IMG/VR virus record: IMGVR_UViG_3300031707_000001
Coordinates: 62,001-126,000 of that record
DNA: 64,000 bases
Direction: 5' to 3' (one strand)
The position numbers and the translations under genes were made by a program. Below, one piece after another: positions 2,545-50,645 of this stretch; position 1 is the first letter of the stretch; the number at the start of each line of letters is the position of its first letter. The notes beneath the pieces were generated by a model, which saw only the letters and a program-made list of their open reading frames with translations, searched no databases and was not told the DNA's origin.

Positions 2545-4149
2545 ATGATCAGAGGACACAATAAGGATGTGCTCTACGAGCACACGTTAGACCATGCCCT
2601 GGAATTCTTCAGCAAGGCCGGCAGCTTATACGTCATGGGACCACGGGGTCGTAAGCCCTTTGAGCCCTATGGCGGCGAGCATGCTGAAACGTCTGCGCTG
2701 GCATTGTTCCAGGCCGTTTGGGCCGTCAACTACAGGGAAGCACACCTCGATGCTATGCGGCTGTTGTTCTGGCTGCGTGACTGTCGGGGAGGGGCGGGTA
2801 ACCGTTCCGGCTTCCGTTCTTGTCTTCACTGGCTGGCAACCGATGCCGGTCCGGAGGCCAGGGAGTGGTTGAAGCTAAACCTGTCTCGGATTCCCGAGCA
2901 TGGTCGTATGGATGATCTTGAATGCCTGTTTGGTACGCCTCTGGAACCGGAGGCTGCCAAGCTATGGGCAGCAGGCATCAAAGCAGCCGATCACTACGCC
3001 TTGAAATGGGCCAAGCGGAACATGCGTCCGCTGCAGAAGGTCCTGGGCGTGAACGAAGCCGGTCTGAGAAAGCTTTTGTCAAAGCCGGAGAGAAAGACAG
3101 TTGAGCAGCACATGTGCTCCAACTTGTCCATTTGTCCACATTGCAAGAAACTGACCCACTGGTCAAAGCCATCAACAAAGAACACAGGTAACCCGTGGGA
3201 TCGAGCAGGTGAAGGCACGTTGGCTACCGATCTTTATGCGTGTTCCGAATGCGGGACTATGCAACGAGGGCCAATCAAGTGGGAGCCGATCGAGTACAAA
3301 GCTGTGCCGTCCAAGGCCATGAAGGCATATGCAAAAGCATTTGCCAAGCACGACCCGGAAGGATTTACAGGCTTCAAGGATAAGCTGAAGAAGGGTGAGA
3401 CCAAGGTTAATGCTTCAGTCCTGTTTCCACACGACTGCAAGCATGGGGTTGACAACGGTGATCCCGAAATCGCCGATGCCCAGTTCGATGCTTTGCCCGA
3501 CTACATGGGCAAGACCAACCAGCGCATCATGTGCCTGGTGGATACTTCAGGCAGTATGAGCGCTGCCGTCGCAGGCGGTACAGTCATGCGGATCGACGTG
3601 TCGGTTTCGCTTGGCTTGTATTGCAGTGACCGATTGGGCAAAGAGAATCCACTGTACCGGAAGTATATGGAGTTCTCCTCCAATCCATCCTTCAAGGATT
3701 GGAAAGGCAAGAAGTTCTCTGAAGCTTGTCAGGACCAGGATGGGTGGTGTGGCTCGACTAACATCGAAGCCGCATTGGACTTCCTTCTGGCCTTCGCCAA
3801 GAAGCAGAAGATTCAGCCGGAATATATGATCAATACACTGTTGATCCTATCAGATATGCAATTCGATCAGGGTACGGGAGCAGGCAATACCAATCGAACC
3901 GTGGTAGAGAATTGCATGATACGTTGGGCAGACGCAGGTTACGACATACCTAAAATTGTTTACTGGAACCTCGCTGGGTACGCCGGACAGCCGGCAACTT
4001 CCCAGTCTGAGAATATCGGACTCGTGTCTGGTTTCTCGCCTTCTGTTCTGAAGGCGATCTTGGCCGGTGATGATTTTAGTCCTGTCGCTATCATGCGCCG
4101 AGCCCTGGATAAATACCAGGTAACGGCTCCCGCAAATAAGAGCCGATGA
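2545..4149 (+). CDS. DUF2828-family protein (TROVE/Ro60-like helical domain + C-terminal vWA)
   Basis: LFWLRDCRGGAGNR, IPEHGRMDDL, VEQHMC..W..IEYKAVPSKAM, CLVDTSGSM (MIDAS), GSTN, LILSDMQFD, IVYWNL, GLVSGFSP. RBS AAGGAG. Confidence 0.85.
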   Translation: MIRGHNKDVLYEHTLDHALEFFSKAGSLYVMGPRGRKPFEPYGGEHAETSALALFQAVWAVNYREAHLDAMRLLFWLRDCRGGAGNRSGFRSCLHWLATDAGPEAREWLKLNLSRIPEHGRMDDLECLFGTPLEPEAAKLWAAGIKAADHYALKWAKRNMRPLQKVLGVNEAGLRKLLSKPERKTVEQHMCSNLSICPHCKKLTHWSKPSTKNTGNPWDRAGEGTLATDLYACSECGTMQRGPIKWEPIEYKAVPSKAMKAYAKAFAKHDPEGFTGFKDKLKKGETKVNASVLFPHDCKHGVDNGDPEIADAQFDALPDYMGKTNQRIMCLVDTSGSMSAAVAGGTVMRIDVSVSLGLYCSDRLGKENPLYRKYMEFSSNPSFKDWKGKKFSEACQDQDGWCGSTNIEAALDFLLAFAKKQKIQPEYMINTLLILSDMQFDQGTGAGNTNRTVVENCMIRWADAGYDIPKIVYWNLAGYAGQPATSQSENIGLVSGFSPSVLKAILAGDDFSPVAIMRRALDKYQVTAPANKSR

Positions 4150-4161
4150 TTTGAACCTACC

Positions 4162-4197
4162 GTGTGGCTGGGGGTTTTCCCCAGCCACACTTACTTT
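4162..4197 (+). terminator. intrinsic terminator after the DUF2828 gene
   Basis: 12-bp stem GTGTGGCTGGGG/CCCCAGCCACAC followed by TTACTTT. Confidence 0.75.
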
Positions 4198-4247: not shown

Positions 4248-4276
4248 TTGAGTAGAACATCGAACCGTGCCATAAT
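4248..4276 (+). promoter_or_regulatory. sigma70-like promoter of the RAMP-array operon
   Basis: TTGAGT 4248-4253, 17 nt, TG-n-CATAAT 4268-4276. GAGGT RBS precedes GTG at 4300. Confidence 0.55.
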
Positions 4277-4299
4277 TACAAGGCACAATGAGGTGAACA

Positions 4300-5049
4300 G
4301 TGAGTAAGGAAAGCAAGTTGAGTAGTTTGACGAAGTGGGTAAAGGTCCGGTTGACGTTCATAGAAGACACGTTGGCCACGAATCCGGAAGACAAAGAACT
4401 CCACGATCGGTTCATTTCCAGCAAGGCGCCGGACGGTTCCGAGCGCAAGCTGGAGAACGACAGTCTGGAAGTTCGGGAGAAGATGGGCACAACCATCTTC
4501 CTGCGGGATCCCAAGACCGGTCAGTTCTGGATGGGAAACCATATGCTTAAGGGTTTCCTGAAAGCAGCCGGCGAAGTCTTCCGGGTCACCGAAGAAGAAC
4601 CGGAAGTCGCCGAAGAGAAGAAGCCTGAGGAAAATGGGAAGGACAAGAAGCCCAAGAAGGTGTCCAAGCAATGGGGCAACATCACGGGCAAGATCAACCA
4701 ATTGGTGAAAGTATACCCCAAGCAGATGTTCATCAATAGTCCGGGCGACAAACCCACCACGGCGCCGGATAGCATCTTGCAGAGAAGTCTGCGTGCTCAA
4801 ACCCAACAGGGACCCAGAGTAGCCCTGGCAAAATCCGAAGCCGTCCAAGCGGGATCGTATCTGGACGCCACAATCATGCTCATCGGCGACAAGCCGGTGA
4901 CCATGGCCATGATCAAGGAATGCCTTGACTATGGGCTGGTCCACGGTCTTGGACAGTGGAGAAATGCCGGCTACGGCGCCTTCACATACGAGATCCTGGA
5001 GGAAGGTGAAGGTCTTCCCGAGGAAGCCAGAGCTTTCTTGAAAGCGTAA
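4300..5049 (+). CDS. stand-alone Cas7/Csm3-like RAMP-superfamily protein
   Basis: N-terminal strand VRLTFIEDTLAT, helix MLKGFLKAA, thumb-like RSLRAQTQQGPRVALAKSEAV, C-terminal G-rich loop LDYGLVHGLGQWRNAGYGAF. No other cas gene in the window. Confidence 0.8.
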   Translation: MSKESKLSSLTKWVKVRLTFIEDTLATNPEDKELHDRFISSKAPDGSERKLENDSLEVREKMGTTIFLRDPKTGQFWMGNHMLKGFLKAAGEVFRVTEEEPEVAEEKKPEENGKDKKPKKVSKQWGNITGKINQLVKVYPKQMFINSPGDKPTTAPDSILQRSLRAQTQQGPRVALAKSEAVQAGSYLDATIMLIGDKPVTMAMIKECLDYGLVHGLGQWRNAGYGAFTYEILEEGEGLPEEARAFLKA

Positions 5050-5058
5050 CGCTACAAT

Positions 5059-5098
5059 GGGAATAGGGCCAGTCGCCTAGCGTTTGAGCCCTATTCCC
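5059..5098 (+). promoter_or_regulatory. hairpin between the RAMP stop codon and the array
   Basis: Perfect 11-bp inverted repeat GGGAATAGGGC (5059-5069) / GCCCTATTCCC (5088-5098). Confidence 0.7.
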
Positions 5099-5105
5099 TA
5101 CTCTC

Positions 5106-5940
5106 CTTGTGCAGTAAAGCCAATTAAGCGAGAGTTGTGTACGGTGAGGTTTGGTGATGGTGACGTTGGGTGGCGTTTGGTGCGGTGATGTCCGGTGTCG
5201 GTAAAGTGGGGTAACGTCACGTGCTGTATGAGTAGTGTTCGGTCTTGTCCTGCCACGTCTAGTAACAGTGTTGCGCTGCGTGGTTCGGTCTAGTTACAGT
5301 GGTGTGGGGCGCTCTGTAGTCCAGTACTGTCATGGTTATGTGAAATACTGTCTAGTTAAGGTGGAGTAAAGTCCTGTATCGTCAGGTTCTGGTGATGTGG
5401 AGTTTAGTCCCATATCGTCAGGGTGAGGTATTGCCGAGTGATGTGCGGTGACGTAGTGTCCGGTTTCGTGATGCGTAGGTAATGTCTAGCCCGGCATTGT
5501 CGAGCAATAGTGTTGTGTGGTCCGGTACTGCGTGGTCCGGTATAGGTAATGTATAGCACAGTGATGTGATGCATAGTTTTGGTGGTGTTTGCTAAAGCTA
5601 TGTGCAGTAATGGTGGAGTGCGGTCCAGCCATGTTTCGTGTGGGTCAAGTCAAGCCTTGCCAAGTCTCGTTTCGGTTCCTCATATGTGTAGTGATGCGGC
5701 GTTACGGTGGCGTCATGCCATGCGAGGTGATGTGATGGTAGCGTCAGGCAGCGTAAAGCTGAGTGTTGGTGTCGTAAAGTTCAGCCAAGTCCGTGTAGGG
5801 TTCTGTGCGGTCCTGTTGAGGTGTGGCAAAGCGCTGTTAGGCCATGGTTTGGTTGGGTCTAGTCGAGCGGTGTCACGGTCATGTGAAGCCAGGTCGACTA
5901 CAGTGATGGTGTAGTTGAGTCAAGTGTTGCGCCGTGGTGC
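5106..5940 (+). ncRNA. periodic NNN-GY pentamer array with NNN-RGT hexamer punctuation (putative guide-RNA array)
   Basis: Hand parse gives ~160 units. Over 90% of pentamers end in GT/GC (9 exceptions counted), and 24 hexamers end in GGT (20) or AGT (4), with modal spacing 31 nt. Confidence 0.85.
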
Positions 5941-5943
5941 TTC

Positions 5944-5976
5944 GGGCTCCCTGCTGTCGGGGAGCCCTTTCTTTTC
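5944..5976 (+). terminator. intrinsic terminator closing the array
   Basis: GGGCTCCC/GGGAGCCC 8-bp stem followed by TTTCTTTT, 3 nt after the last pentamer. Confidence 0.85.
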
Positions 5977-6016: not shown

Positions 6017-6145
6017 ATGAAGAAAGGATATACGTTGGTTGAAGTAATGATTGCTGTTGTTTTCCTGGCTATAGCGATTGCTGTAGTAATGGGGGCAATA
6101 CAATCAACCGGGTGTGGCCGGTTTATAGGAGATATGCTTCGATGA
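6017..6145 (+). CDS. 42-aa peptide with a type IV prepilin N-terminal cleavage/methylation motif
   Basis: MKKG|YTLVEVMIAVVFLAIAIAVV matches the class III signal G|FTLxE followed by a hydrophobic helix. AAGGAA RBS. Confidence 0.7.
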   Translation: MKKGYTLVEVMIAVVFLAIAIAVVMGAIQSTGCGRFIGDMLR

Positions 6146-13388: not shown

Positions 13389-13861
13389 ACAGGTACAAGA
13401 CAGACTGGAAGGTGTTGCGCTACATAGCAGAGCGGTCTCCGAAGCACTTTGCAACGCAGATTCGCAAGCGCAATCAGGGATTGCTGGATGCCTTGAACAA
13501 AAGACGGGATAGATTTATATCGTCCGTTGGATGTCCACACTGTGACGGTGATTGCTGTTCCTGCCTATGGTCGGAAGCGTATAAGCATTATCATTCTGAT
13601 AGGTTGCATATCATCATGAACGCCTGCGTTCTCGTGAACTTTGGTGGGTTGCATATCATGAACGCCTGCGTTCTCGTGAACTTTGGTGGGTACAGCATAC
13701 CCGATGTTCGGCAAGTCGTGAGTTATTGGAGTTTCCAGGAACAGGTTAAATCCATTCACGACAGCAACGTCCGGGAAATCATGAAAGCCAAGGCTTTCCT
13801 GAAAGCCCACATAGCGTGGACCAAAAAGCCCTACTGGGGCAGGAAGGTCAAGCATACATGA
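13385..13861 (+). CDS. Cys-rich paralogue family member 3 (with 14-aa tandem duplication)
   Basis: VLRYIAERSPK; GCPHC; HIMNACVLVNFGG duplicated; FLKAHIAWTKKPYWG. Confidence 0.7.
   Translation: MNRYKTDWKVLRYIAERSPKHFATQIRKRNQGLLDALNKRRDRFISSVGCPHCDGDCCSCLWSEAYKHYHSDRLHIIMNACVLVNFGGLHIMNACVLVNFGGYSIPDVRQVVSYWSFQEQVKSIHDSNVREIMKAKAFLKAHIAWTKKPYWGRKVKHT
13613..13691. repeat. in-frame tandem duplication, period 42 bp
   Basis: ATCATGAACGCCTGCGTTCTCGTGAACTTTGGTGGGT at 13613 and 13655. Confidence 0.9.
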
Positions 13862-14343
13862 AGCGAAAGACGCACAAGACAGACTGGGCCGTACTTCGAC
13901 GGGTAGCAGAGCGAAGCCCGAAGAGCTTTGCTCTGCGCATACGCAGGCGCAACGTTGGGCTATTGCGAGCCCTGGAGAAGCACAATTGGGTCTTCTCTTC
14001 CCACGTGGGATGTCCGCACTGTGTCGACTGCGAAACTTGCCTTTGGATAGAGGCAATGAAAGCAGTAAAGAACGTCAACGATGGATGTTGCGGAGTGCGT
14101 TTTGGTGGACTACCCCTACGTAGAATACATATGATTGCATATGATTCTACTTCAGAAAAGGTGTACTCACCAAACACCCTGCCCGGAGATCTGTTTCTAC
14201 GATACTTCAACGACGCAGTACGCTTCGTGAAAGCCCACATAGCGTGGACCAAAAAGCCCTACTGGGGCAGGAAGCTCAATAAACCAAAAAGCCCTACTGG
14301 GGCAGGAAGCTCAATAAACCATGAAGAAACTCAACACACGTGA
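13858..14343 (+). CDS. Cys-rich paralogue family member 4
   Basis: VLRRVAERSPK; GCPHC..C..CLW; CCGVRFGG; FVKAHIAWTKKPYWG. Confidence 0.7.
   Translation: MKRKTHKTDWAVLRRVAERSPKSFALRIRRRNVGLLRALEKHNWVFSSHVGCPHCVDCETCLWIEAMKAVKNVNDGCCGVRFGGLPLRRIHMIAYDSTSEKVYSPNTLPGDLFLRYFNDAVRFVKAHIAWTKKPYWGRKLNKPKSPTGAGSSINHEETQHT
14248..14320. repeat. 35-bp tandem duplication
   Basis: ACCAAAAAGCCCTACTGGGGCAGGAAGCTCAATAA at 14248 and 14283. Confidence 0.9.
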
Positions 14344-33001: not shown

Positions 33002-36000
33002 ATGCCTCAGCTTCCGGAAAATCTCCGTGAGTTCGACGATACGGATAAGACCAGGGAACTCATTTACTCCAACGTAATGGATTCGCTGCAGAAGCGTTTT
33101 CCTATTGAGGACAACGAGTATCGTTTGGAACTATCCGGCCTGAAGTATTCTGGTCCTCAGCACTTTTCCCTTGACCAACAGAAACAAGCCCTGATGAAGG
33201 ATCGGCACTTGCACACTCCGATTACAGGGAAGTGGCGCTTGATGGACAAGGCCAACAATGCTGTACTTGGCGAGAAGGAAGACGTTGTAATGAACGTCCC
33301 GTACTACACGCCACGGGGAACATTCATCTTCAATGGCAACGAGTACAGTACAGTCAATCAGTCCCGTTTGAAGCCTGGTGCCTATACTCGTAAGCGTAAG
33401 ACGGGCGAAGTGGAAACGCAATTCAACGTACGGCCTGGGACCGGCCGGCCGTTCCATTTGCGTCTGGAACCAGAAACGGGTATCTTCCGCATCAGCGTTG
33501 AACAATCGAACATTCCTCTCTATACCCTGTTGAATACACTGGGCGTATCTGATAAGGAACTCATGCAGGCATGGGGTCCAGAGATGCTTGAAGCCAATAT
33601 CAAGAAGCAAGATAAGCGGGCCCTTCCAAAGATGTACGAACGTTTTTCGGGGTATAAGTACGATCCCAATGCCCGGGAAGACCAGATGAAGCAGTACATC
33701 AACGAGGCTTTGGCAAAGTTTGAATTGGACCCGGACGTCATGGCTCGTACGCTTGGCATTCGTGACACGAAGAACGTTACGCCACAGGCTCTTATTAGAG
33801 CCACGCAGAAGATGTTGAATGTATCCAAAGGCACAGAGGAGCCAGACGATCGTGATGCTCCAATGTACAGCAACATCTACAGCGTTGAAGATTTACTTCA
33901 GGAGCGCATAGACAAGGATGCCGGAAGACTGGCCAAGACATTACTGTATAAAGCACGTCGTACAAAGAACTTAGACCATGTACGTCGTGGGGCACTAGAT
34001 CCATACATCATGGGACAGAACGGGTTCCTTCTGGCCTCTCGATTGACAATGCCGTTGGAAGAAACCAATCCGCTGCATACGCTGGAGCAATCCGCCCGCA
34101 TTACCAAGTTGGGACAGGGCGGTATAAGCTCTGCCGAATCCATTACTGATGCAGCCCGGGACGTGAACAATGGGCAGTTTGGATTCGTTGACCCGATCAC
34201 TGGACCAGAGCACATCAACGTGGGTATTGACGTGCGTGCCGCTTACAAGAGTTTCAAGGGCAAAGACAAACAGATCTATGGGGAGTTCAGACATCCTGGA
34301 AGCGGAAAGATGTTCTACCTAAGACCTGAAGACGTAGCAGACAAAGCCGTGGCGTTTCCTGGCGAAATGAAGAAGCCAGGAGATACGGCTGTCGTTATGC
34401 AAAACGGGAAAATCAAACGAGTTGCGAAGCCAGAGGTTGACTTTGAGGTTCCATCCTTTGGTCACATGATGTCTTCGCATACGAACATGAATCCTATGCC
34501 AACAGCCGTCCTTCCTGGTCGGCAATTCTATGGCGCAAAATTCTGGAGTCAGTATCTGCCTATGGTAGACGGGGAAACCCCGTTGGTGGATTCTTTAACG
34601 CCAGAAGGCAAACAGACATTCGGTGAATACTACGGACGTAAGGTAGGAGCGCTGAATTCGAAGGTTGCGGGAACTGTAGCGAAAATCACAGATAACAGCA
34701 TTACCGTTGTTGGTGATGATGGTCAAAAACACGTTACTGAATTGGTGAAGGACTTCCCGTTTAACCGACTGACCGGGATCAGTTATTTCCCGGCCGTGAA
34801 GCCTGGAGACAGGGTGAATGTAGGTGATATGGTAGCTCACTCCAACTTCACGGACTCCAAGACGGGAGGGATTAACATGGGCCGCAACCTGAAGACCCTG
34901 ATGATGCCGGCCCGAGGTATGTCTTACGAAGATGCATATGTTATCAGCGAATCGGCCTCAAAGAAAATGACAACGGAGCGACTATATGGATTCGACCAGG
35001 AAAGCAGACAGGGCGTCGATATTGGAAAGAACAAGTTCATTTCAACCTTTGCCCAGAAATTCACCAAGGACCAGGTGTCCAACATTGACGACGAAGGCGT
35101 GGTCAAGCCCGGCACCGTTGTCAGCAAGGGCGATCCTCTCATCCTCGCTGTTGGACCTAAACTCCTTACCTCCGCCGACGCACAACTGGGCAAGCTGCAT
35201 AAAGTGCTGCGAAACGCCTTTACCGACAAATCCGTGATATGGGAATCCAACTATCCTGGTACAGTTACAGATGTGGCTATGACCGGGCATGGTGCCCGTG
35301 TGAACGTAAAGAGCATTCCGCCCGTTCAAGTCGGCGACAAGTTGTCCACACGGTTTGGACTGAAGGGTGTGGTTGGCCGTATTCTACCGGACGATCAGAT
35401 GCCCCGGGATCTGGTAACCAATGACCCCTATGATATGCTGCTCAATCCTATGGGCGTGCTGTCCCGTGTGGCGCCAAATCAGATCATTGAAATGAATCTG
35501 GCCAAGATTGCCAAGAAGACCGGCCAGCCTATTCGTTTACCCCAGGAGCCTCCTCCAGAAGGTTGGGCTGCTTGGGCCAAGAAGCAAATGGATGCAGCTG
35601 GCATCAAGGAAGACAATGACATCTTCGATCCAGTTACGGGAAAGACCATTAAGGGCGTATCAGATGGGTTTGTGTATACAGCGGCATTCCACCACTTGGC
35701 GGAAAAGAAGCTGTCTGCCCGTGGAGAGTCGGGTGCCTATACAATCGACGAACAGCCAGCCAAGGGTGGATTCGAAGGCGCCAAGCGATTCAGCCAGATG
35801 GACGTGAATGCTACGCTGGCACACGGTGCGCCCGAAGTCATTCGGGACGTACAGTTGATTCGTGGTACCAAGAATGAAGAGTTCTGGAAGGCCCTGAAGT
35901 TGGGCCGGCCACTACCCGAACCAACAGTTCCTTTTATCTATGACAAGTTCCTCAATACGCTTCGAGCAGGTGGCGTCAACGTGCAGGAAAAGGGGGACAT

Positions 36001-37393
36001 AGTATCGCTCATGCCTATGACCGATGCTGACGTAGATAGCTTGTCTAAAGGCAAACTGGAGAGCAAGCGTCCATTCGATATGGTAACGCCTGACTTTGAA
36101 CCTATACCTGGTGGGCTGTTCGACATGGGCAAGACAGGTGGCATGAACGGCAATCGCTGGACCCATATCGATCTTGTTGAACCTTTGCCCAACCCTGTGA
36201 TGGAGGAGCCTATTCGCCGAATACTTGGCTTGAAGGTACAGGAACTCAGGGATGTAGTTTCCGGCAAAGCATCCATCAATGGCTTGGCCGGTGGACGTGG
36301 ACTGCAGGAAGCCCTAAAGAATATAGACATTGATGCTGCCATTGAAGAGCACAAGGACAAGGTCAAGTCGCTGCGTGGATCCAACCGTGACAATTCCGTA
36401 AAGGTATTGGGATATTTGTCAGCAGCGAAGAAGCAGGGTGTGCATCCTTCAGCCTGGATGATCACCAAGGTACCCGTACTTCCACCTAAGTTTCGACCCG
36501 TATCACGTATGGGCGACGTTGCATTGATTACCGATCTAAATGAGCTATATGCCTCAGTCATGGAAGTAAACAATAACATCCGTGACATGCGCAAGGTATT
36601 GCCGGAGAGTGAGACAGCAGAACAGAAAGAGTTGCTATATGATGCAGTCTCGGCCGCATTTGGTTTGGGCGATCCCATTACTACAGAAGGTAAGTCCAAG
36701 CGTTTGAAGGGCGCCATTCGTCAGATTATTGGGGCCAGCCCAAAGTCTGGAATGTTCCAATCCCGGGTTATCTCTAAGACTGTAAGCGATGTAGGGCGTG
36801 GCGTAGTAACGCCCGATCCTAATCTGGATATGGACAGCATTGGCATTCCAGAGGATTCAGCGTGGAGTCTCTATAAAGACTTTGTAATGCGCCGACTGGT
36901 ACGTCGGGGTTATCCGTCCGTACGATCGTTGGAACTGATTGAGAAGAAAGATCCAGTTGCCAAGGAAATGTTGGAAGCTGAAATGGCTAGCCGGCCTGTA
37001 TTGGTGGACCGGGCCCCAACGTGGCACAAGTTCAATCTGTTGGCTATGTATCCACACATTTCGGACGGCAATACTATCCGTGTATCGCCACTGGTGACCA
37101 AGGGATTCAACATGGACTTCGACGGCGACCAGGCCAACTTCCACGTTCCCGTGAGCGATAAAGCTGTTGAACAAGCCAAGAACAAAATGCTACCATCACG
37201 CAATTTGTTCAGCTTGACCGATTTGAAATCGGTACGTCACTCTCCATCCATGGAGATGACATTGGGTCTATATTGGCTGACCCGGGAAAAGACAGGTAAG
37301 GCACCGTTGCGGTTTGCTTCGCTTACAGATGCTAAGAAAGCATACCACGAAGGCAAGATTGGGTTGAACGATCCGATCACAATAGGAGCATAA
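33002..37393 (+). CDS. rpoB: phage multisubunit RNA polymerase: beta subunit fused to the N-terminal half of beta' (contains the catalytic DFDGD)
   Basis: Beta motifs GTFIFNG, MSYEDAYVISE, GDKLSTRFGLKGVV, LLNPMGVLSR, HLAEKKLSARG. Beta' motifs WMITKVPVLPPKFRP, DLNELY, VLVDRAPTWHK, FNMDFDGDQANFHVP. Confidence 0.95.
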   Translation: MPQLPENLREFDDTDKTRELIYSNVMDSLQKRFPIEDNEYRLELSGLKYSGPQHFSLDQQKQALMKDRHLHTPITGKWRLMDKANNAVLGEKEDVVMNVPYYTPRGTFIFNGNEYSTVNQSRLKPGAYTRKRKTGEVETQFNVRPGTGRPFHLRLEPETGIFRISVEQSNIPLYTLLNTLGVSDKELMQAWGPEMLEANIKKQDKRALPKMYERFSGYKYDPNAREDQMKQYINEALAKFELDPDVMARTLGIRDTKNVTPQALIRATQKMLNVSKGTEEPDDRDAPMYSNIYSVEDLLQERIDKDAGRLAKTLLYKARRTKNLDHVRRGALDPYIMGQNGFLLASRLTMPLEETNPLHTLEQSARITKLGQGGISSAESITDAARDVNNGQFGFVDPITGPEHINVGIDVRAAYKSFKGKDKQIYGEFRHPGSGKMFYLRPEDVADKAVAFPGEMKKPGDTAVVMQNGKIKRVAKPEVDFEVPSFGHMMSSHTNMNPMPTAVLPGRQFYGAKFWSQYLPMVDGETPLVDSLTPEGKQTFGEYYGRKVGALNSKVAGTVAKITDNSITVVGDDGQKHVTELVKDFPFNRLTGISYFPAVKPGDRVNVGDMVAHSNFTDSKTGGINMGRNLKTLMMPARGMSYEDAYVISESASKKMTTERLYGFDQESRQGVDIGKNKFISTFAQKFTKDQVSNIDDEGVVKPGTVVSKGDPLILAVGPKLLTSADAQLGKLHKVLRNAFTDKSVIWESNYPGTVTDVAMTGHGARVNVKSIPPVQVGDKLSTRFGLKGVVGRILPDDQMPRDLVTNDPYDMLLNPMGVLSRVAPNQIIEMNLAKIAKKTGQPIRLPQEPPPEGWAAWAKKQMDAAGIKEDNDIFDPVTGKTIKGVSDGFVYTAAFHHLAEKKLSARGESGAYTIDEQPAKGGFEGAKRFSQMDVNATLAHGAPEVIRDVQLIRGTKNEEFWKALKLGRPLPEPTVPFIYDKFLNTLRAGGVNVQEKGDIVSLMPMTDADVDSLSKGKLESKRPFDMVTPDFEPIPGGLFDMGKTGGMNGNRWTHIDLVEPLPNPVMEEPIRRILGLKVQELRDVVSGKASINGLAGGRGLQEALKNIDIDAAIEEHKDKVKSLRGSNRDNSVKVLGYLSAAKKQGVHPSAWMITKVPVLPPKFRPVSRMGDVALITDLNELYASVMEVNNNIRDMRKVLPESETAEQKELLYDAVSAAFGLGDPITTEGKSKRLKGAIRQIIGASPKSGMFQSRVISKTVSDVGRGVVTPDPNLDMDSIGIPEDSAWSLYKDFVMRRLVRRGYPSVRSLELIEKKDPVAKEMLEAEMASRPVLVDRAPTWHKFNLLAMYPHISDGNTIRVSPLVTKGFNMDFDGDQANFHVPVSDKAVEQAKNKMLPSRNLFSLTDLKSVRHSPSMEMTLGLYWLTREKTGKAPLRFASLTDAKKAYHEGKIGLNDPITIGA

Positions 37394-39215: not shown

Positions 39216-39746
39216 ATGGACAACCCACAATTGGGATTTACCCAAAGGCTCGATGTTGAATTGAAATCTTGTAGTATGCCATCGCACGATCCTCGAAGAG
39301 GTTCAACGGAAGAATTGATTCGTGACATGCATAGGATCCTCACAGGCAACGGAGACTTCAACCACGGTTTGATCTTCAAGGTGGCGTCTGCCAATACCAA
39401 CCTGGGAATGCTACAGGAAAGTGTAAATGGTATGTCAACCAAACTAGATGGTCAGATTACAAAATGTCTGGCGATACAGAATGCCCACGCACTTGAGGCG
39501 GCAGAGAGGACGACAGTAGCCAAGGTAGGAAGAGCCATATGGGAAAACAAGTCCTTGATTTTTGTGATTGTTCTTGGAGCTTTAGTATACTGGGGAACTA
39601 TTACCAAACAGGCAGCGGCGGGCATTGGAGAAGAAAAGCTGGCGAAGTTGGTTGATGCTCGAATAGAGAAAATTCTTCCCGGCGGCACTTCGTTATTGCC
39701 ATCCAAACAGCAACCCAATCCAACCAAACAAATCAAGACACCTTGA
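39216..39746 (+). CDS. coiled-coil protein with one C-proximal TM helix
   Basis: SLIFVIVLGALVYWGTI. GAGGT RBS. Confidence 0.55.
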   Translation: MDNPQLGFTQRLDVELKSCSMPSHDPRRGSTEELIRDMHRILTGNGDFNHGLIFKVASANTNLGMLQESVNGMSTKLDGQITKCLAIQNAHALEAAERTTVAKVGRAIWENKSLIFVIVLGALVYWGTITKQAAAGIGEEKLAKLVDARIEKILPGGTSLLPSKQQPNPTKQIKTP

Positions 39747-41602
39747 TGAAGCCTACCACCCTCGGACAAATCCTAGTCAATGACGCTCTTCCAGAAAAGT
39801 TCAGGAACTATGATCGTGTCCTGACCAAGGCAGAAGCAGATACGTTATTGACACAGATAGCCAAGGAAGTTCCCGATCAGTACAAGCATATTTCGTGGGA
39901 ACTTGTACAATTGGGAAAGGAAGCTGCTTTCACAGAAGGAAGCACACTCAAACTATCCGATCTACAGCCTGTATTCGACAAGACTGATCTACTCAAGCAT
40001 GTTGAACAGCAGGAGAAAAAGATCAAAGCCAGCAAAAGCATGACCGAGGAAGAAAAGCAGCAAGCCCTGGAAACAGTTTATACAGAAGTGCAGAAACTTA
40101 TCGTGGATCAAACATATGATTCGGCTTTAGCCAACAACAATCCGTTTGCCATTCAAGTAAAGTCAAAAGCTCGTGGTAACAAGTCGCAGTTGACGGCACT
40201 ACTGTCAACCCCATCTGTCTATCAGGATGCACAGGAACGCACCATACCGGTATTCATTCGTCGGAGCTATTCCGAAGGACTCGATCCTCACGAATACTGG
40301 GCATCTACATATGGCGCCCGCAAGGCCATTATCGCCACCAAGTTTGCAACCCGGGATGCTGGTGCGTTGGGTAAGCAGCTGGGAGTAGCTGTATCCAACT
40401 TGGTTGTGACTCAAGACGATTGTGGTACACCAGCCGGCATTCCGGTACCTACGGACGATAAAGACAATGTCGGAGCAGTTTTGTCCAGGAATACTGGACG
40501 CTATCCAGCCGGAACTGTAATTACCAAAGAAGTCTTAGCCGATTTGAAGCAGAAGAAAATGGACGAGATTGTTGTGCGTTCACCTATGACCTGTAGTTTG
40601 GCGGAAGGCGTTTGCAAACGGTGTGCCGGCTTACGGGAAGATGGAAACTTCCCACCAATCGGTTATCATCTGGGATTGAATGCTTCATCGGCTTTAGCTG
40701 AACGTATTGCACAGGCATCTCTTAATCAGAAGCATACAGGTGGACAACGTGATCCCAAAGGACACATCGTTTATGCTGGATTCGATGTGATTAACAACCT
40801 GGCCCAGGTTCCAAAGAATTTCCCAAATCGTGCTACAGTTGCAGAACACGAAGGTACAGTCGATAAGATTGAGGAAGCGCCACAGGGTGGTTGGAACGTA
40901 ATCATTGATAACAACGCCCACTACGTTCCGGCCGATCGGCCATTGCTTGTGAAGGAAGGTGACAAAGTAGAGCAAGGCGATACGCTTTCCGAAGGTATTG
41001 TCAATCCCGCTGATGCGGTACGTTTGAAGGGTATAGGAGAAGGCAGACGCTATTTTGCTGAGCGGTTTACCAAAGCTTTCAGGGAATCAGACTTTGAAGT
41101 CAACCGAAGAAACGTTGAAGCTGTAGCCAGGGCATCCATCGATCATGTAAGCGTAGACGATCCAGAAGGCGTCGGTGACTTCCTGCCCGGAGACATCATT
41201 TCGTATAGCGGGGTTGCACATTCTTATCGTCCTCGTGCAGATGCCCAGCAGTTGGATCCAGCCAAAGCCAAAGGTATGTATCTGGAACAGCCCGCATTAC
41301 ACTATACGATTGGTACACGGCTTACAGGTAAAATGGCTGAGGCATTAAAGAAGCACGGAGTGGGTAGTGTAATCGTACATCCACAGCCTGCAGGGTTCAG
41401 TTCTACCATGGTTGGTGTAACCAAGGTTCCGGCGTATACAGACGACTGGATGGCCAGATTGGGCTCTACATACTTGGAATCCCGCCTACTTGAAGATGTT
41501 CAACGTGGTGCAAAATCCAACGTGCACGGGCTAGAACCGTTGCCTGGTATTGCGAAAGGTGTTGAATTCGGTCAGCCGAAAGGTTCAAAATTTACTTACT
41601 AG
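39746..41602 (+). CDS. rpoC: phage RNA polymerase beta' C-terminal half
   Basis: TTLGQILVN, SKARGNKSQ, SYSEGL..EYWASTYGARK (bridge-helix region), VTQDDCGT, VRSPMTC..VCKRC, ASSALAERIAQASLNQKHTGG (trigger-loop region). Confidence 0.93.
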   Translation: MKPTTLGQILVNDALPEKFRNYDRVLTKAEADTLLTQIAKEVPDQYKHISWELVQLGKEAAFTEGSTLKLSDLQPVFDKTDLLKHVEQQEKKIKASKSMTEEEKQQALETVYTEVQKLIVDQTYDSALANNNPFAIQVKSKARGNKSQLTALLSTPSVYQDAQERTIPVFIRRSYSEGLDPHEYWASTYGARKAIIATKFATRDAGALGKQLGVAVSNLVVTQDDCGTPAGIPVPTDDKDNVGAVLSRNTGRYPAGTVITKEVLADLKQKKMDEIVVRSPMTCSLAEGVCKRCAGLREDGNFPPIGYHLGLNASSALAERIAQASLNQKHTGGQRDPKGHIVYAGFDVINNLAQVPKNFPNRATVAEHEGTVDKIEEAPQGGWNVIIDNNAHYVPADRPLLVKEGDKVEQGDTLSEGIVNPADAVRLKGIGEGRRYFAERFTKAFRESDFEVNRRNVEAVARASIDHVSVDDPEGVGDFLPGDIISYSGVAHSYRPRADAQQLDPAKAKGMYLEQPALHYTIGTRLTGKMAEALKKHGVGSVIVHPQPAGFSSTMVGVTKVPAYTDDWMARLGSTYLESRLLEDVQRGAKSNVHGLEPLPGIAKGVEFGQPKGSKFTY

Positions 41603-49196: not shown

Positions 49197-50645
49197 ATGT
49201 CAACAATGCAGGAAATTCTCGCTTCTACACGTAAACTTATCGAAGTCAAGAAAGCAGAGTTCAATAGTACTCTGAAGAAGGCTGACGATAAGGCACTGAA
49301 CAACACAGGGGCGGGCGATGATAGCCCAATCACTCGTGGTCATGCGTTGGATGCTACGCAGTCAGCGCTTGAACCTACAAAGAAGCCCTTGATTACTTCT
49401 GATGCTATGACAGCACAGCCTCCTTCGGACGGTAAAGGCACAAAGGCTGATCTGAAGGGCAAGAACGAAGGCAACGTGACAGACCGTGCTGACAAGTTGG
49501 AAGCCGGCGATGCCGTTCTGGAGCCTAAGAAAGAGCCCTTGATTACATCAGATGCAAAGGCCGATCCCGAAGCAGGAGCCTCGGGTCAGACAGCAAAGCA
49601 AGCCACAGCAAAGTTGGCCAATGAGATCCTGAAGGACATTCGGGAATATCAGCAGAAGCAAGCTGCGCCGAAGGCTAAGCAGGACGTGAAAGCGGATGCA
49701 AAAGTAGCTTCGACGAAGAAAGCTGATCCAGATCCGGACCCCGATCCAGATCCCGATCCAGATCCGGACCCTGATCCCGATCCAGATCCGGACCCTGATC
49801 CAGGCAAGGGAAAGAAAGGCAAGAAGGTTGTAAAAGAGGAAGATAAGAAGGAAGCTTCTGGTCCTCAGCTTGAGTTGACAACTGACGTGTTGGCCAAGAT
49901 TGCCTCGATCGTACTTTCTTCTGAAGAAGGTGCACAGTTTGTGGAAGGCCAGCTTGCCAAGGCAGCCGGTGCAGAAGCTGCACAGGAGACTTTGGCTTTT
50001 TTGGCAGAACAGTCCGAACTGGCTGAAAAACAGGCTGCTTTCGAGCAGGGTCAGGCGGACGCCGAAGCATTGATTCAGCAAGCGCTGTATCAGGCCGGTC
50101 GGGAAGCGGGCCAAAAAGAAGCAGCGGCAGCTCAACAGAATAAGTTGATGGCGGGTCTGGGACAGAAAGTTGCCCAGGCAGGCATCGATGAAATGATGGG
50201 CGCTGGTGCTGCTCCTATGGAAGGTGGCGCTGGTGGAGCCGGCGGACCGGATGTTGGCGCCGCAGAACTAGCTGGTGGAGCTGGTGGAGCTGGTGGCGTT
50301 GGTGGAGCCGGCGAAGCTGGTGGGGAAATCACAGAAGAAGATCTGATGATGGCTCTTCAAGCATTGGTGCAGGAAGGCACAATTCAGCCCGAGGAAGCTC
50401 AGGCGGTTGTGGAGGCCTTGACGGGCGGCGGAGCGGGTGGTGAAGCGGCAGGAGCAGCTCCTGCAGCAGCCCCTGAGGCAGCTCCTGCGGAAGCACCAGC
50501 TGCAGTAGGTGGTGCAGAACACGAGGCATCTGAAACTCCTGAAAAGGAAAAGAAAGAAGAGAAGGAATCTTCTGAAAAGTCAGTTGAGAAGAAAGCCGCT
50601 GCTCTTCTGGATGCCATCCGTCAGGTCCGTGCAAGTCGTAAGTAA
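49197..50645 (+). CDS. putative scaffolding protein with (DP)13 repeat
   Basis: Charged, low-complexity helical protein between protease and capsid genes; duplicated LE....LEP.K.PLITSDA. Confidence 0.6.
   Translation: MSTMQEILASTRKLIEVKKAEFNSTLKKADDKALNNTGAGDDSPITRGHALDATQSALEPTKKPLITSDAMTAQPPSDGKGTKADLKGKNEGNVTDRADKLEAGDAVLEPKKEPLITSDAKADPEAGASGQTAKQATAKLANEILKDIREYQQKQAAPKAKQDVKADAKVASTKKADPDPDPDPDPDPDPDPDPDPDPDPDPGKGKKGKKVVKEEDKKEASGPQLELTTDVLAKIASIVLSSEEGAQFVEGQLAKAAGAEAAQETLAFLAEQSELAEKQAAFEQGQADAEALIQQALYQAGREAGQKEAAAAQQNKLMAGLGQKVAQAGIDEMMGAGAAPMEGGAGGAGGPDVGAAELAGGAGGAGGVGGAGEAGGEITEEDLMMALQALVQEGTIQPEEAQAVVEALTGGGAGGEAAGAAPAAAPEAAPAEAPAAVGGAEHEASETPEKEKKEEKESSEKSVEKKAAALLDAIRQVRASRK
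49725..49802 (+). repeat. 13 x 6-bp GAY-CCN coding repeat (Asp-Pro)
   Basis: gat cca gat ccg gac ccc ..., 13 dipeptides counted. Confidence 0.95.

What the first reader, a model, noticed from the sequence alone, without database searches (positions are those of the whole stretch)
4248..5976. Self-contained operon: lone Cas7-like RAMP gene plus an ~835-nt NNN-GY pentamer array (candidate non-CRISPR RNA-guided system)
Seen: promoter (4248-4276), RAMP-fold gene (4300-5049, G-rich loop GLGQWRNAGYG), 11-bp hairpin, then ~160 short units in one register (e.g. tgtgt acggt gaggt ttggt ... aaagt ggggt aacgt cacgt gctgt), then an intrinsic terminator. Over 90% of pentamers end in GT/GC while the first three bases vary freely. 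No cas1/2/3/5/6/10 genes and no classical repeats occur in the window. Established: Cas7-family RAMPs polymerise along a guide RNA at a fixed number of nucleotides per subunit. Inference: each subunit clamps a constant GY and presents the variable bases, so the target is read by a discontinuous code, probably against competing phages or host genes. From memory (not verifiable here), viral RAMP + GGY/NN pentamer systems (VIPR) were reported recently. This copy differs in having a variable third base (NNN-GY) and a higher-order period.
Basis: partly seen in the sequence, partly recalled or inferred. Interest (0 to 1): 0.97.

Follow-up and report, generated by a model that had tools for sequence, protein, structure and literature searches.

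The report
Phage VIPR guide-RNA system, variant repeats
A 210-kb sediment phage carries a small Cas7-like protein gene followed by an ~840-base array of five-base repeats; this is a member of the VIPR family of phage RNA-guided DNA-silencing systems first reported in 2026, so it is real and interesting but not a new kind of system.

Summary
ORF 4300-5049 is predicted to fold as a Cas7-type RAMP. Bases 5106-5943 are a strand-specific array of 133 NNNGY pentamers (95.5% end in GY; the three N positions carry 1.93-1.98 bits each). The array is not in one register. Twenty-five NNN(G/A)GT hexamers shift the phase by +1 about every 31 nt.

All 80 homologous loci fetched from IMG/VR carry a co-directional period-5 array abutting the gene, and those arrays show the same GG-hexamer punctuation. 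A profile comparison links the family to the characterised SUSP1 Vipr over its full length. The residues that hold G2 and Y3 are kept (W220, R221). The two that read G1 are changed (H17 to T27, D177 to Q219), which fits the loss of the first G.

This is therefore a VIPR system. The 2026 preprints already list YNNNG and NNNNG repeats and "staggered" arrays, so I file it as a new member of a known kind.

Three things remain open:
- the decoding rule (two or three bases read per unit),
- what the hexamers do,
- what the array targets.

No target was found in any search, and no RNA data were listed. Stop-like triplets TAA/TAG are depleted across the family's arrays, which hints that the third N is not free.

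The parts
4162..4190 (+). Terminator-like hairpin that closes the upstream gene and marks the 5' boundary of the unit
   Evidence: 13-bp stem followed by a T-rich tail. Folding gives -26.6 kcal/mol, z -4.4. Conserved in the relative L082.
4248..4276 (+). Sigma-70-like promoter candidate (TTGAGT, 17 nt, CATAAT, with TG before the second hexamer)
   Evidence: 9/12 consensus match. Such matches are not more frequent here than in shuffles. Only partly conserved in L082. The phage encodes its own multisubunit RNA polymerase, so promoter use is inferred.
4290..4295 (+). Shine-Dalgarno-like GAGGTG, 4 nt before the GTG start codon
   Evidence: Read directly from the sequence.
4300..5049 (+). vipr gene: a 249-aa single-RRM RAMP with a beta-hairpin thumb (about residues 158-182) and G-loop GLGQWRNAGYG (216-226)
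   Evidence: AlphaFold model has pLDDT 84.5 and pTM 0.81. The top 50 Foldseek PDB hits are all Cas7/Csm3/Cmr4/Cas7-11; the best is type VII Cas7 at E 1.7e-8. Profile against PDB Cas7: E 3.4e-5. hhalign against the SUSP1 Vipr clade: 81% probability, E 1.3e-5, 181 columns. 1,344 clusters at 50% identity match at E<=0.001.
5059..5098 (+). Hairpin between the gene and the array, with no U-tract after it
   Evidence: -26.7 kcal/mol, z -4.2. It lies in a 38-nt insertion that is absent from L082, so it is not a conserved part of the system.
5104..5135 (+). Conserved array leader, already in pentamer phase
   Evidence: Nearly identical in L082. Retained in a variant strain contig whose array then differs (run X3 record 6).
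5136..5902 (+). Hypervariable array body: NNNGY pentamers grouped by NNN(G/A)GT hexamers into modules of mostly 6 units (31 nt)
   Evidence: 12 of 24 modules have 6 units. The content is wholly different in L082 (protein 81% identical) and in variant strains, while the flanks are kept. The RNA has no significant structure (z -1.8) and no Rfam match.
5203..5233 (+). Example of one 31-nt module: five pentamers followed by the hexamer ATGAGT
   Evidence: checked.
5361..5432 (+). Two adjacent modules that are 75% identical: a diverged tandem duplication of one module
   Evidence: family D1. The differences fall mostly in the N positions.
5903..5943 (+). Conserved array trailer (the last repeat units)
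   Evidence: Partly conserved with L082.
5944..5976 (+). Intrinsic terminator: 10-bp GC-rich stem followed by TTTCTTTT
   Evidence: -25.7 kcal/mol for the 61-nt 5925-5985 fold that contains it, z -3.1. Conserved with changes in L082 and in the variant strain contig (run X3 record 7).

Best explanation
This is a VIPR (Viral Interference Programmable Repeat) locus of a ~210-kb phage. It holds one Vipr-family RAMP gene and, on the same transcript, a long vrRNA array without tails.

Proposed mechanism. The first two steps are inferred from homology; the rest are inferred by analogy with the characterised SUSP1 system or are open.
1. Vipr protomers polymerise along the RNA, one per five-base unit.
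2. The conserved G and Y of each unit sit in the pockets that hold G2 and Y3 in SUSP1 Vipr (W220, R221, L217, H81/M82). The pocket that reads the first G has lost its specificity (T27, Q219), so that base is free to vary.
3. The variable bases specify a DNA target in a competing mobile element or host, and binding silences it.
4. GG-containing hexamers divide the array into modules of about six protomers. These are most likely individual guides or processing units.

Shown here: the RAMP fold, the array grammar, the invariable gene-array linkage across the family, and hypervariable array content between conserved flanks.

Not shown: transcription, RNP formation, the pairing rule, or any target.
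For: Fold. The model is confident, and all 50 top-listed PDB Foldseek matches are Cas7-class RAMPs.

Sequence. The G-loop matches Cas7 and Csm4. The full-length profile match to the SUSP1 Vipr clade has E 1.3e-5. I located SUSP1 Vipr at NC_028808 28474-29061, and it fits the published residue numbers H17, K33, D177, W178 and R179.

Array statistics.

Family linkage. All 80 IMG/VR homologue loci have an abutting period-5 array. In the 74 of the 80 whose arrays were re-parsed (period-5 region at least ~180 nt), the arrays are co-directional with the gene, G4 is 71-96% in all but one short weak region, and 46-100% of hexamers contain GG in all but one locus. The modal module size is 6 units.

Substitution rates between homologous arrays: N1 0.096, N2 0.107, N3 0.114, G4 0.023, Y5 0.063.

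Covariation. The G-loop variant GLG goes with a strict pyrimidine at position 5, while GIG tolerates A. Helix-1 HM/HV goes with T and YQ with C. These are the positions that form the Y3 pocket in SUSP1.

Hypervariability. Related strains keep the leader, trailer and terminator but carry different array content.

Context. The contig is viral. The window encodes an RNA polymerase, a DNA ligase and a cell-wall hydrolase. No cas domain was found in the ORFs scanned, and there are no CRISPR repeats.

Literature. VIPR biology, the YNNNG/NNNNG variants and staggered arrays are described in 10.64898/2026.04.26.720920.
Against: - The sequence link to a characterised Vipr is only moderate (81% probability), and no solved Vipr structure was among the listed PDB matches.
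- No vap accessory gene is conserved next to the gene.
- There is no per-guide 3' tail or pseudoknot as in SUSP1, and no ribozyme.
- No RNA-seq run was listed.
- No target was found under any of 7-10 decoding rules in about 1.4 Mb of local sequence (both strands counted). Nine exact pattern scans drawn from family arrays also found nothing in IMG/VR, JGI metagenomes or GTDB genomes.
- The array has about 160 contiguous units, far more than the 9-16 repeats of characterised vrRNAs.
Confidence: 0.8

Rival explanations
1. Triplet-reading variant. Only G and Y are sequestered. All three N bases of each unit pair with the target, so the code is three bases per protomer. The target is then read either contiguously (whole codons) or with a one-base skip (period 4).
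For: N3 is as variable as N1 and N2 and evolves at almost the same rate (0.114 against 0.096 and 0.107).

Across the family, TAA and TAG triplets are depleted (77 observed, 117 expected, z -4.4, 0 of 2,000 per-array shuffles). TAC and TAT are not (85 against 91). TTA/CTA are mildly depleted (z -2.4). So N3 is not independent of N1N2, and the triplets look partly codon-like.

A six-unit module would specify only 12 bases under a two-base rule, but 18 under a three-base rule.
Against: - The residues for the G2 and Y3 pockets are kept and only the G1 pocket is altered. The simplest reading is that N3 still occupies the old G1 site and is not available for pairing.
- Other triplets unrelated to stop codons deviate as strongly (AGT, GTC, TTT).
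- Stops do not cluster clearly by module (z 2.1 and -0.9).
- Contiguous and period-4 patterns found no target.
Confidence: 0.22
2. Same protein-RNA filament, but not a guide. The long array would be a scaffold or sponge, for example a decoy that soaks up host RAMP complexes or a structural nucleoprotein of the phage, and the N bases would be merely unconstrained.
For: The array is very long (about 160 units) and has no tails. No targets were found. No accessory effector gene is present.
Against: - Array content turns over completely between close relatives while the flanks stay conserved. That is the pattern of a specificity element, not a scaffold.
- The N triplets show non-random, codon-like biases.
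- Characterised relatives are programmable guides.
- A positive control with a SUSP1 vrRNA found nothing in IMG/VR. It found one likely true in-frame target only in the genome collection, so the negative target searches are weak evidence.
Confidence: 0.05
3. An orphan or degraded CRISPR-Cas Cas7 gene next to chance or simple-repeat DNA, with no functional link between them.
For: One JGI record names a homologue Cmr6/Cas7. The best PDB matches are CRISPR Cas7 proteins.
Against: - The gene-array pairing recurs in 80 of 80 viral loci with the same strand and the same grammar.
- The periodicity is far beyond that of shuffles.
- There are no CRISPR repeats and no other cas genes.
Confidence: 0.01

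Closest known systems
VIPR type II (Escherichia phage SUSP1 and Pseudomonas fulva prophage; bioRxiv 10.64898/2026.04.26.720920 and 10.64898/2026.04.26.720927)
   Same: - A small single-RRM RAMP with thumb and G-loop, encoded by a phage and sitting next to arrays of five-base repeats on the same strand.
- The W-R pair of the G-loop and the helix-1 positions that hold G2 and Y3 align.
- Hypervariable positions alternate with a fixed G-pyrimidine core.
- No cas genes and no CRISPR array.
   Different: - The repeat is NNNGY (YNNNG in the paper's notation), not NNGGY. The G1-reading residues are replaced (H17 to T27, D177 to Q219).
- There is one continuous array of about 160 units, rather than separate ~100-nt vrRNAs of 9-16 repeats each capped by a pseudoknot tail.
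- Hexamers shift the register every ~31 nt. The SUSP1 vrRNA I read has 16 units in one register.
- No vap gene was found.
- Protein identity is very low; the match appears only at profile level.
Non-canonical VIPR arrays: YNNNG, NNNNG and NNNGG repeats and "staggered" arrays (10.64898/2026.04.26.720920, methods and fig. S17-S18); WGT/NN and TGH/NN cores (10.64898/2026.10.21.760802)
   Same: A relaxed first position of the fixed trinucleotide, and contiguous arrays in which one vrRNA ends where the next begins. This is most likely the very class to which the window's locus belongs.
   Different: I could read only text and legends, not figures or data tables. So I cannot confirm that the hexamer punctuation, the modal six-unit module, or this protein clade is what those papers describe. 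The window's contig is from IMG/VR, whereas the first paper's set came from NCBI.
Cas7 backbone subunits of class 1 CRISPR effectors (type VII Cas7, type III Csm3/Cmr4)
   Same: The same fold (Foldseek E 1e-8 to 1e-5, TM 0.5-0.6 normalised by target length) and the same G-loop motif. By inference, the same mode of polymerising along a guide RNA at a fixed step.
   Different: The step is five bases rather than six. There is no repeat-spacer array, no Cas5, Cas6, Cas10 or Cas14 partner, and no adaptation genes. The genome is viral.

Membership tests
VIPR | Vipr protein: a small single-RRM RAMP with a G-rich loop and a thumb | tested here: met
   Model pLDDT 84.5. All of the listed top PDB fold matches are Cas7-class. 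The G-loop GLGQWRNAGYG matches Cas7 and Csm4. A beta-hairpin lies at residues 158-182.
VIPR | Sequence homology to a characterised Vipr (SUSP1) | tested here: met
   hhalign of the family profile A1 against the SUSP1-clade profile A2 gives 81% probability and E 1.3e-5 over 181 colinear columns. The strength is moderate. The single-sequence comparison matched only the G-loop.
VIPR | An adjacent same-strand array of tandem five-base repeats, with a fixed core and hypervariable positions | tested here: met
   for the window. for all 80 homologue loci, and for the 74 of them whose arrays were re-parsed.
VIPR | The canonical GGY/NN repeat | tested here: not met
   The position before GY is G in only 24% of pentamers. 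The repeat fits the YNNNG alternative that the defining paper accepts.
VIPR | Not associated with a CRISPR array or cas genes; usually viral | tested here: met
   The contig is an IMG/VR entry of 210,732 bp. No CRISPR-like repeats. No second RAMP. No cas domain in the Pfam-scanned ORFs, that is the neighbouring genes and 19 of the largest ORFs. Smaller ORFs were not all scanned.
VIPR | A vipr-accessory (vap) gene in the operon (typical, not universal) | tested here: not met
   No neighbouring gene is conserved across the 82 loci clustered. The neighbours here are a DUF7788/DUF2828 protein and a 42-aa prepilin-like ORF, both outside the promoter-terminator unit.
VIPR | Each vrRNA capped by a conserved structured 3' tail | tested here: not met
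   There are no tails between modules, only an array-level leader, trailer and terminator. There are no inverted repeats in the array, no significant fold and no Rfam family.
VIPR | The vrRNA is expressed and co-purifies with Vipr | not testable with these tools
   No RNA run was listed for this sequence. Only DNA metagenome runs hold it.
VIPR | DNA recognition by the variable bases with a one-base skip | tested here: inconclusive
   No match above shuffled controls under 7-10 rules. Nine remote scans with family-array patterns returned 0 hits. A SUSP1 positive control gave 0 hits in IMG/VR. It gave one in-frame hit with the skip at the wobble base in a Citrobacter genome.
CRISPR-Cas class 1 (Cas7 of type III/VII) | A repeat-spacer CRISPR array and partner cas genes | tested here: not met

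The most novel reading that the evidence does not exclude
This large Vipr clade may use a recognition grammar different from the published two-bases-plus-skip rule. Each protomer would present three bases, read as whole codons. The conserved GG hexamers would delimit guides one helical turn long, of about six protomers. That would be a mini repeat-spacer architecture (6-nt punctuation plus a 25-nt variable block) which evolves by module duplication without Cas1/Cas2.
Probability: 0.2. Interest if true: 0.75.

Novelty: new member of a known kind. Interest (0 to 1): 0.45.

Why it matters
VIPR is a newly described way of recognising DNA with a non-contiguous RNA code, and only the GGY/NN type has been characterised experimentally.

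This locus represents a very large clade: 1,344 clusters at 50% identity match at E<=0.001. In this clade the first fixed base is free, the arrays are long and have no tails, and a GG hexamer punctuates every five to seven units.

Working out the pairing rule and the role of the hexamers would show how flexible the code is. It would also show whether short guides of six protomers suffice for specific targeting.

The substitutions mapped onto the G1 pocket, and the covariation between pocket residues and the fifth repeat base, give direct and testable predictions about how repeat specificity is set.

Tried and rejected
1. Pfam and PHROGs on the protein gave nothing useful.

2. tblastn against GenBank phages found only unannotated gut phages. 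SUSP1 was not hit.

3. BFVD fold search found family members and two archaeal-virus proteins, but no characterised Vipr.

4. Self-targeting and local targeting. Exact gapped-seed searches under 10 rules, and mismatch-tolerant searches under 5-7 rules, were run against the window plus 81 loci (about 1.4 Mb counting both strands). They gave no excess over shuffled-unit controls. The apparent hits under the period-5 rule were array-to-array homology with unmasked arrays.

5. Remote exact scans all returned 0 hits:
- the 11-unit hexamer-free run at 5426-5481 as N1N2x in IMG/VR, JGI metagenomes and GTDB genomes;
- the same run as NNNx in IMG/VR and as N1N2xx in JGI metagenomes;
- long runs from L003 and L010 as N1N2x;
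- two window modules read as contiguous codons.
A SUSP1 control also gave 0 hits in IMG/VR but 1 likely true hit in the genome collection. The negatives therefore mostly reflect database coverage and the need for exact matches.

6. Frame-specific codon-usage likelihoods were uninformative. The array triplets still include some stops, and these dominate the score.

7. Two other weak period-5 signals in the window (about 11401 and 37201) are noise.

8. I could not BLAST the decoded 495-nt concatenation against public collections, because it has no reference and cannot be typed in.

9. The type (I-VII) could not be assigned, because the figures and data tables of the defining paper are not held.
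Full report
**What is there**

The window is part of IMG/VR contig IMGVR_UViG_3300031707_000001 (210,732 bp), from sediment metagenomes. The unit lies between two terminator-like hairpins, at 4162-4190 and 5944-5967. In order it contains:
- a sigma-70-like promoter match at 4248-4276 (9/12, no more frequent than in shuffles);
- a GAGGTG ribosome-binding site at 4290-4295;
- a GTG-started ORF at 4300-5049 (249 aa);
- a strong hairpin at 5059-5098 with no U-tract after it;
- about 840 nt of periodic sequence ending at the terminator.

**The array**

Autocorrelation peaks at lag 5 (0.42) and at lags of 5n+1, with lag 31 the highest (0.45). Tracking the phase of GY shows that it advances by one about every 31 nt.

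A dynamic-programming parse gives 133 pentamers and 25 hexamers downstream of 5130.
- Pentamers are NNNGY: G 96%, then T 77% or C 22%. N1-N3 carry 1.93-1.98 bits each, and N3 is G in only 24%.
- Hexamers are NNN(G 76%/A 16%)GT.
- Shuffled sequence reaches a GY fraction of at most 0.56, against 0.94 observed.

The "one register" description is not. The array is a string of modules, typically five pentamers plus one GG-type hexamer; 12 of 24 modules have six units.

The RNA has no inverted repeats, no fold better than shuffles (z -1.8) and no Rfam match. One adjacent pair of modules (5361-5396 and 5397-5432) is a diverged duplicate at 75% identity.

**The protein**

Pfam and PHROGs give nothing useful. 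The G-loop region matches type VII Cas7 and Csm4 chains weakly (E 1e-3 for the single sequence and 3.4e-5 for the profile).

An AlphaFold model built on 38 homologues is confident (pLDDT 84.5, pTM 0.81). Its top 50 PDB fold matches are all Cas7-class RAMPs: type VII Cas7 at E 1.7e-8, then Csm3, Cmr4 and Cas7-11.

The family is large, with 1,344 clusters at 50% identity matching at E<=0.001. Invariant residues concentrate in the thumb (R162, R165, T168, Q170, G171, R173) and the G-loop (G216, Q219, W220).

**Linkage of gene and array**

All 80 homologous loci fetched from IMG/VR have a period-5 region abutting the gene. I re-parsed, anchored on G alone, the arrays of the 74 of these loci (plus the relative L082) whose period-5 region was long enough, at least about 180 nt. 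They lie on the gene's strand. G4 is 71-96% in all but one short weak region, and the fifth base is a pyrimidine in 44-100%. Hexamers recur every five to seven units, and 46-100% of them contain GG in all but one locus.

**Evolution of the array**

Between homologous arrays the substitution rates per position are:

| Pentamer position | Rate | Hexamer position | Rate |
|---|---|---|---|
| N1 | 0.096 | h1 | 0.063 |
| N2 | 0.107 | h2 | 0.036 |
| N3 | 0.114 | h3 | 0.151 |
| G4 | 0.023 | h4 | 0.022 |
| Y5 | 0.063 | h5 | 0.009 |
| | | h6 | 0.055 |

In the hexamers the GG is the most conserved part of the whole array.

A relative whose protein is 81% identical (L082) has the same gene order, a 90%-identical upstream region, a conserved ~30-nt leader, a partly conserved trailer and a conserved terminator. 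Its array body is completely different and shorter. Variant strain contigs in another sediment sample likewise keep the leader and the terminator and then diverge into different NNNGY units. Conserved flanks around fast-turning content are what a specificity-encoding array should look like.

**Comparison with what is known**

Two April 2026 preprints describe VIPR systems. These consist of phage-encoded Vipr RAMPs and vrRNAs of GGY/NN pentamers that bind dsDNA with a one-base skip and silence competitors. Seven types are defined. YNNNG, NNNNG and NNNGG repeats are listed as alternatives, and "staggered arrays" are mentioned. An October 2026 preprint adds WGT/NN and TGH/NN cores.

I located SUSP1 Vipr at NC_028808 28474-29061; it fits the published numbering for H17, K33, D177, W178 and R179. 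A profile-profile comparison of the window's family with the SUSP1 clade gives 81% probability and E 1.3e-5 over 181 colinear columns.

In that alignment:
- the contacts for G2 and Y3 are kept or conservatively replaced (W178 to W220, R179 to R221, V175 to L217, E71/M72 to H81/M82);
- both contacts for G1 are changed (H17 to T27; D177 to Q219, which is invariant in the family).

This explains in a simple way why the repeat is NGY rather than GGY. The explanation is an inference from an alignment of moderate confidence.

Covariation supports the same geometry. Loci with GLGQWRN have a strict pyrimidine at position 5 (0.83-0.99 in 10 of 13 distinct cases), whereas GIGQWRN loci tolerate A. HM or HV in helix 1 goes with T, and YQ mostly with C. 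These cases are not phylogenetically independent.

**What remains open**

(a) The pairing rule. The parsimonious model is that N3 sits in the relaxed G1 pocket and that N1N2 pair with a one-base skip.

Against full independence of N3, TAA and TAG are depleted among 3,661 non-redundant family triplets (77 observed, 117 expected; z -4.4; 0 of 2,000 per-array shuffles). TAC and TAT are not depleted. TTA/CTA are mildly depleted, and ATG is enriched. This is codon-like and favours some templating of N3. However, other triplets deviate as much, and the stops do not sort cleanly by module.

(b) The hexamers. They may be processing sites, guide boundaries or per-turn register adjustments. The published binary filament has six subunits per turn, which matches the modal module size. 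But module sizes range from about 4 to 9 units, with a minor tail of longer runs, so I treat that match as a coincidence to be tested.

(c) Targets. Nothing was found locally or remotely. A SUSP1 positive control missed in IMG/VR. In the genome collection it hit one Citrobacter gene with 13 of 16 units matching, in frame, with the skipped base at the wobble position. So the method works, but its sensitivity depends on database coverage.

(d) Expression. No RNA run was listed.

**Context**

The window encodes:
- a fused Rpb2/Rpb1-like RNA polymerase ORF and a further Rpb1-domain ORF;
- an ATP-dependent DNA ligase;
- a cell-wall hydrolase;
- a DHH-family protein (a match below Pfam's curated cutoff).

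No cas domain was detected. No vap-like neighbour is conserved across the family.

**Verdict**

This is a genuine VIPR locus of the YNNNG class. It is a new member of a known kind, with a well-defined array grammar that deserves an experimental test of its decoding rule.

Noticed in passing
Family arrays in L001-L082; window 5136-5902: Among the variable triplets, TAA and TAG are depleted (z -4.4 against per-array shuffles) while TAC and TAT are not. TTA is also low. ATG, TTT and TGC are enriched. In the window itself CTA is frequent, as ctagt, often just before a hexamer.
   Followed up: partly
window 2545-4149: The upstream gene encodes a 534-aa DUF7788 + DUF2828 protein. A homologue sits in the same position in L082 and about 2 kb from the vipr gene in the distant locus L022, so a loose association with VIPR loci is possible.
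   Followed up: partly
window 6017-6145: A 42-aa ORF just after the terminator carries a prepilin-type N-terminal methylation motif (PF07963, E 1e-4). It is conserved at the same place in L082.
   Followed up: partly
window 33002-37393 and 39743-41602: One 1,463-aa ORF combines Rpb2 (beta-like) domains with Rpb1 (beta-prime-like) domains 1-2. A second ORF carries Rpb1 domain 5. This is a phage multisubunit RNA polymerase with an unusual fusion.
   Followed up: no
window 5047-5092: The strong hairpin between the gene and the array lies in a 38-nt insertion that is absent from the 81%-identical relative L082, so it is strain-specific.
   Followed up: yes
window 13613-13691 and 14248-14317: Two perfect tandem duplications: 37 nt twice with 42-nt spacing, and 35 nt twice head to tail.
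   Followed up: no
window 49725-49814 and 50202-50322: Coding-type short repeats: GATCCN units of 6 nt (Asp-Pro-like) and GGTGSWGCT-rich runs (Gly/Ala-like), inside large ORFs with no Pfam match.
   Followed up: no
L010 4561-5540: In this relative the module ends are strongly conserved (acagc AATGGC, agggc GAAGGC, gcagc AAAGGC), and whole modules are duplicated with single changes. Modules therefore behave like units with a short 3' handle.
   Followed up: partly
L083 6386-6432 (Citrobacter sp. ANG330, NZ_JASJUI010000001.1): A SUSP1 vrRNA decoded by the published one-base-skip rule matches 13 of 16 units on the antisense strand of a 374-aa ORF, with every skipped base at the codon wobble position. 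This is a likely natural target outside E. coli.
   Followed up: partly
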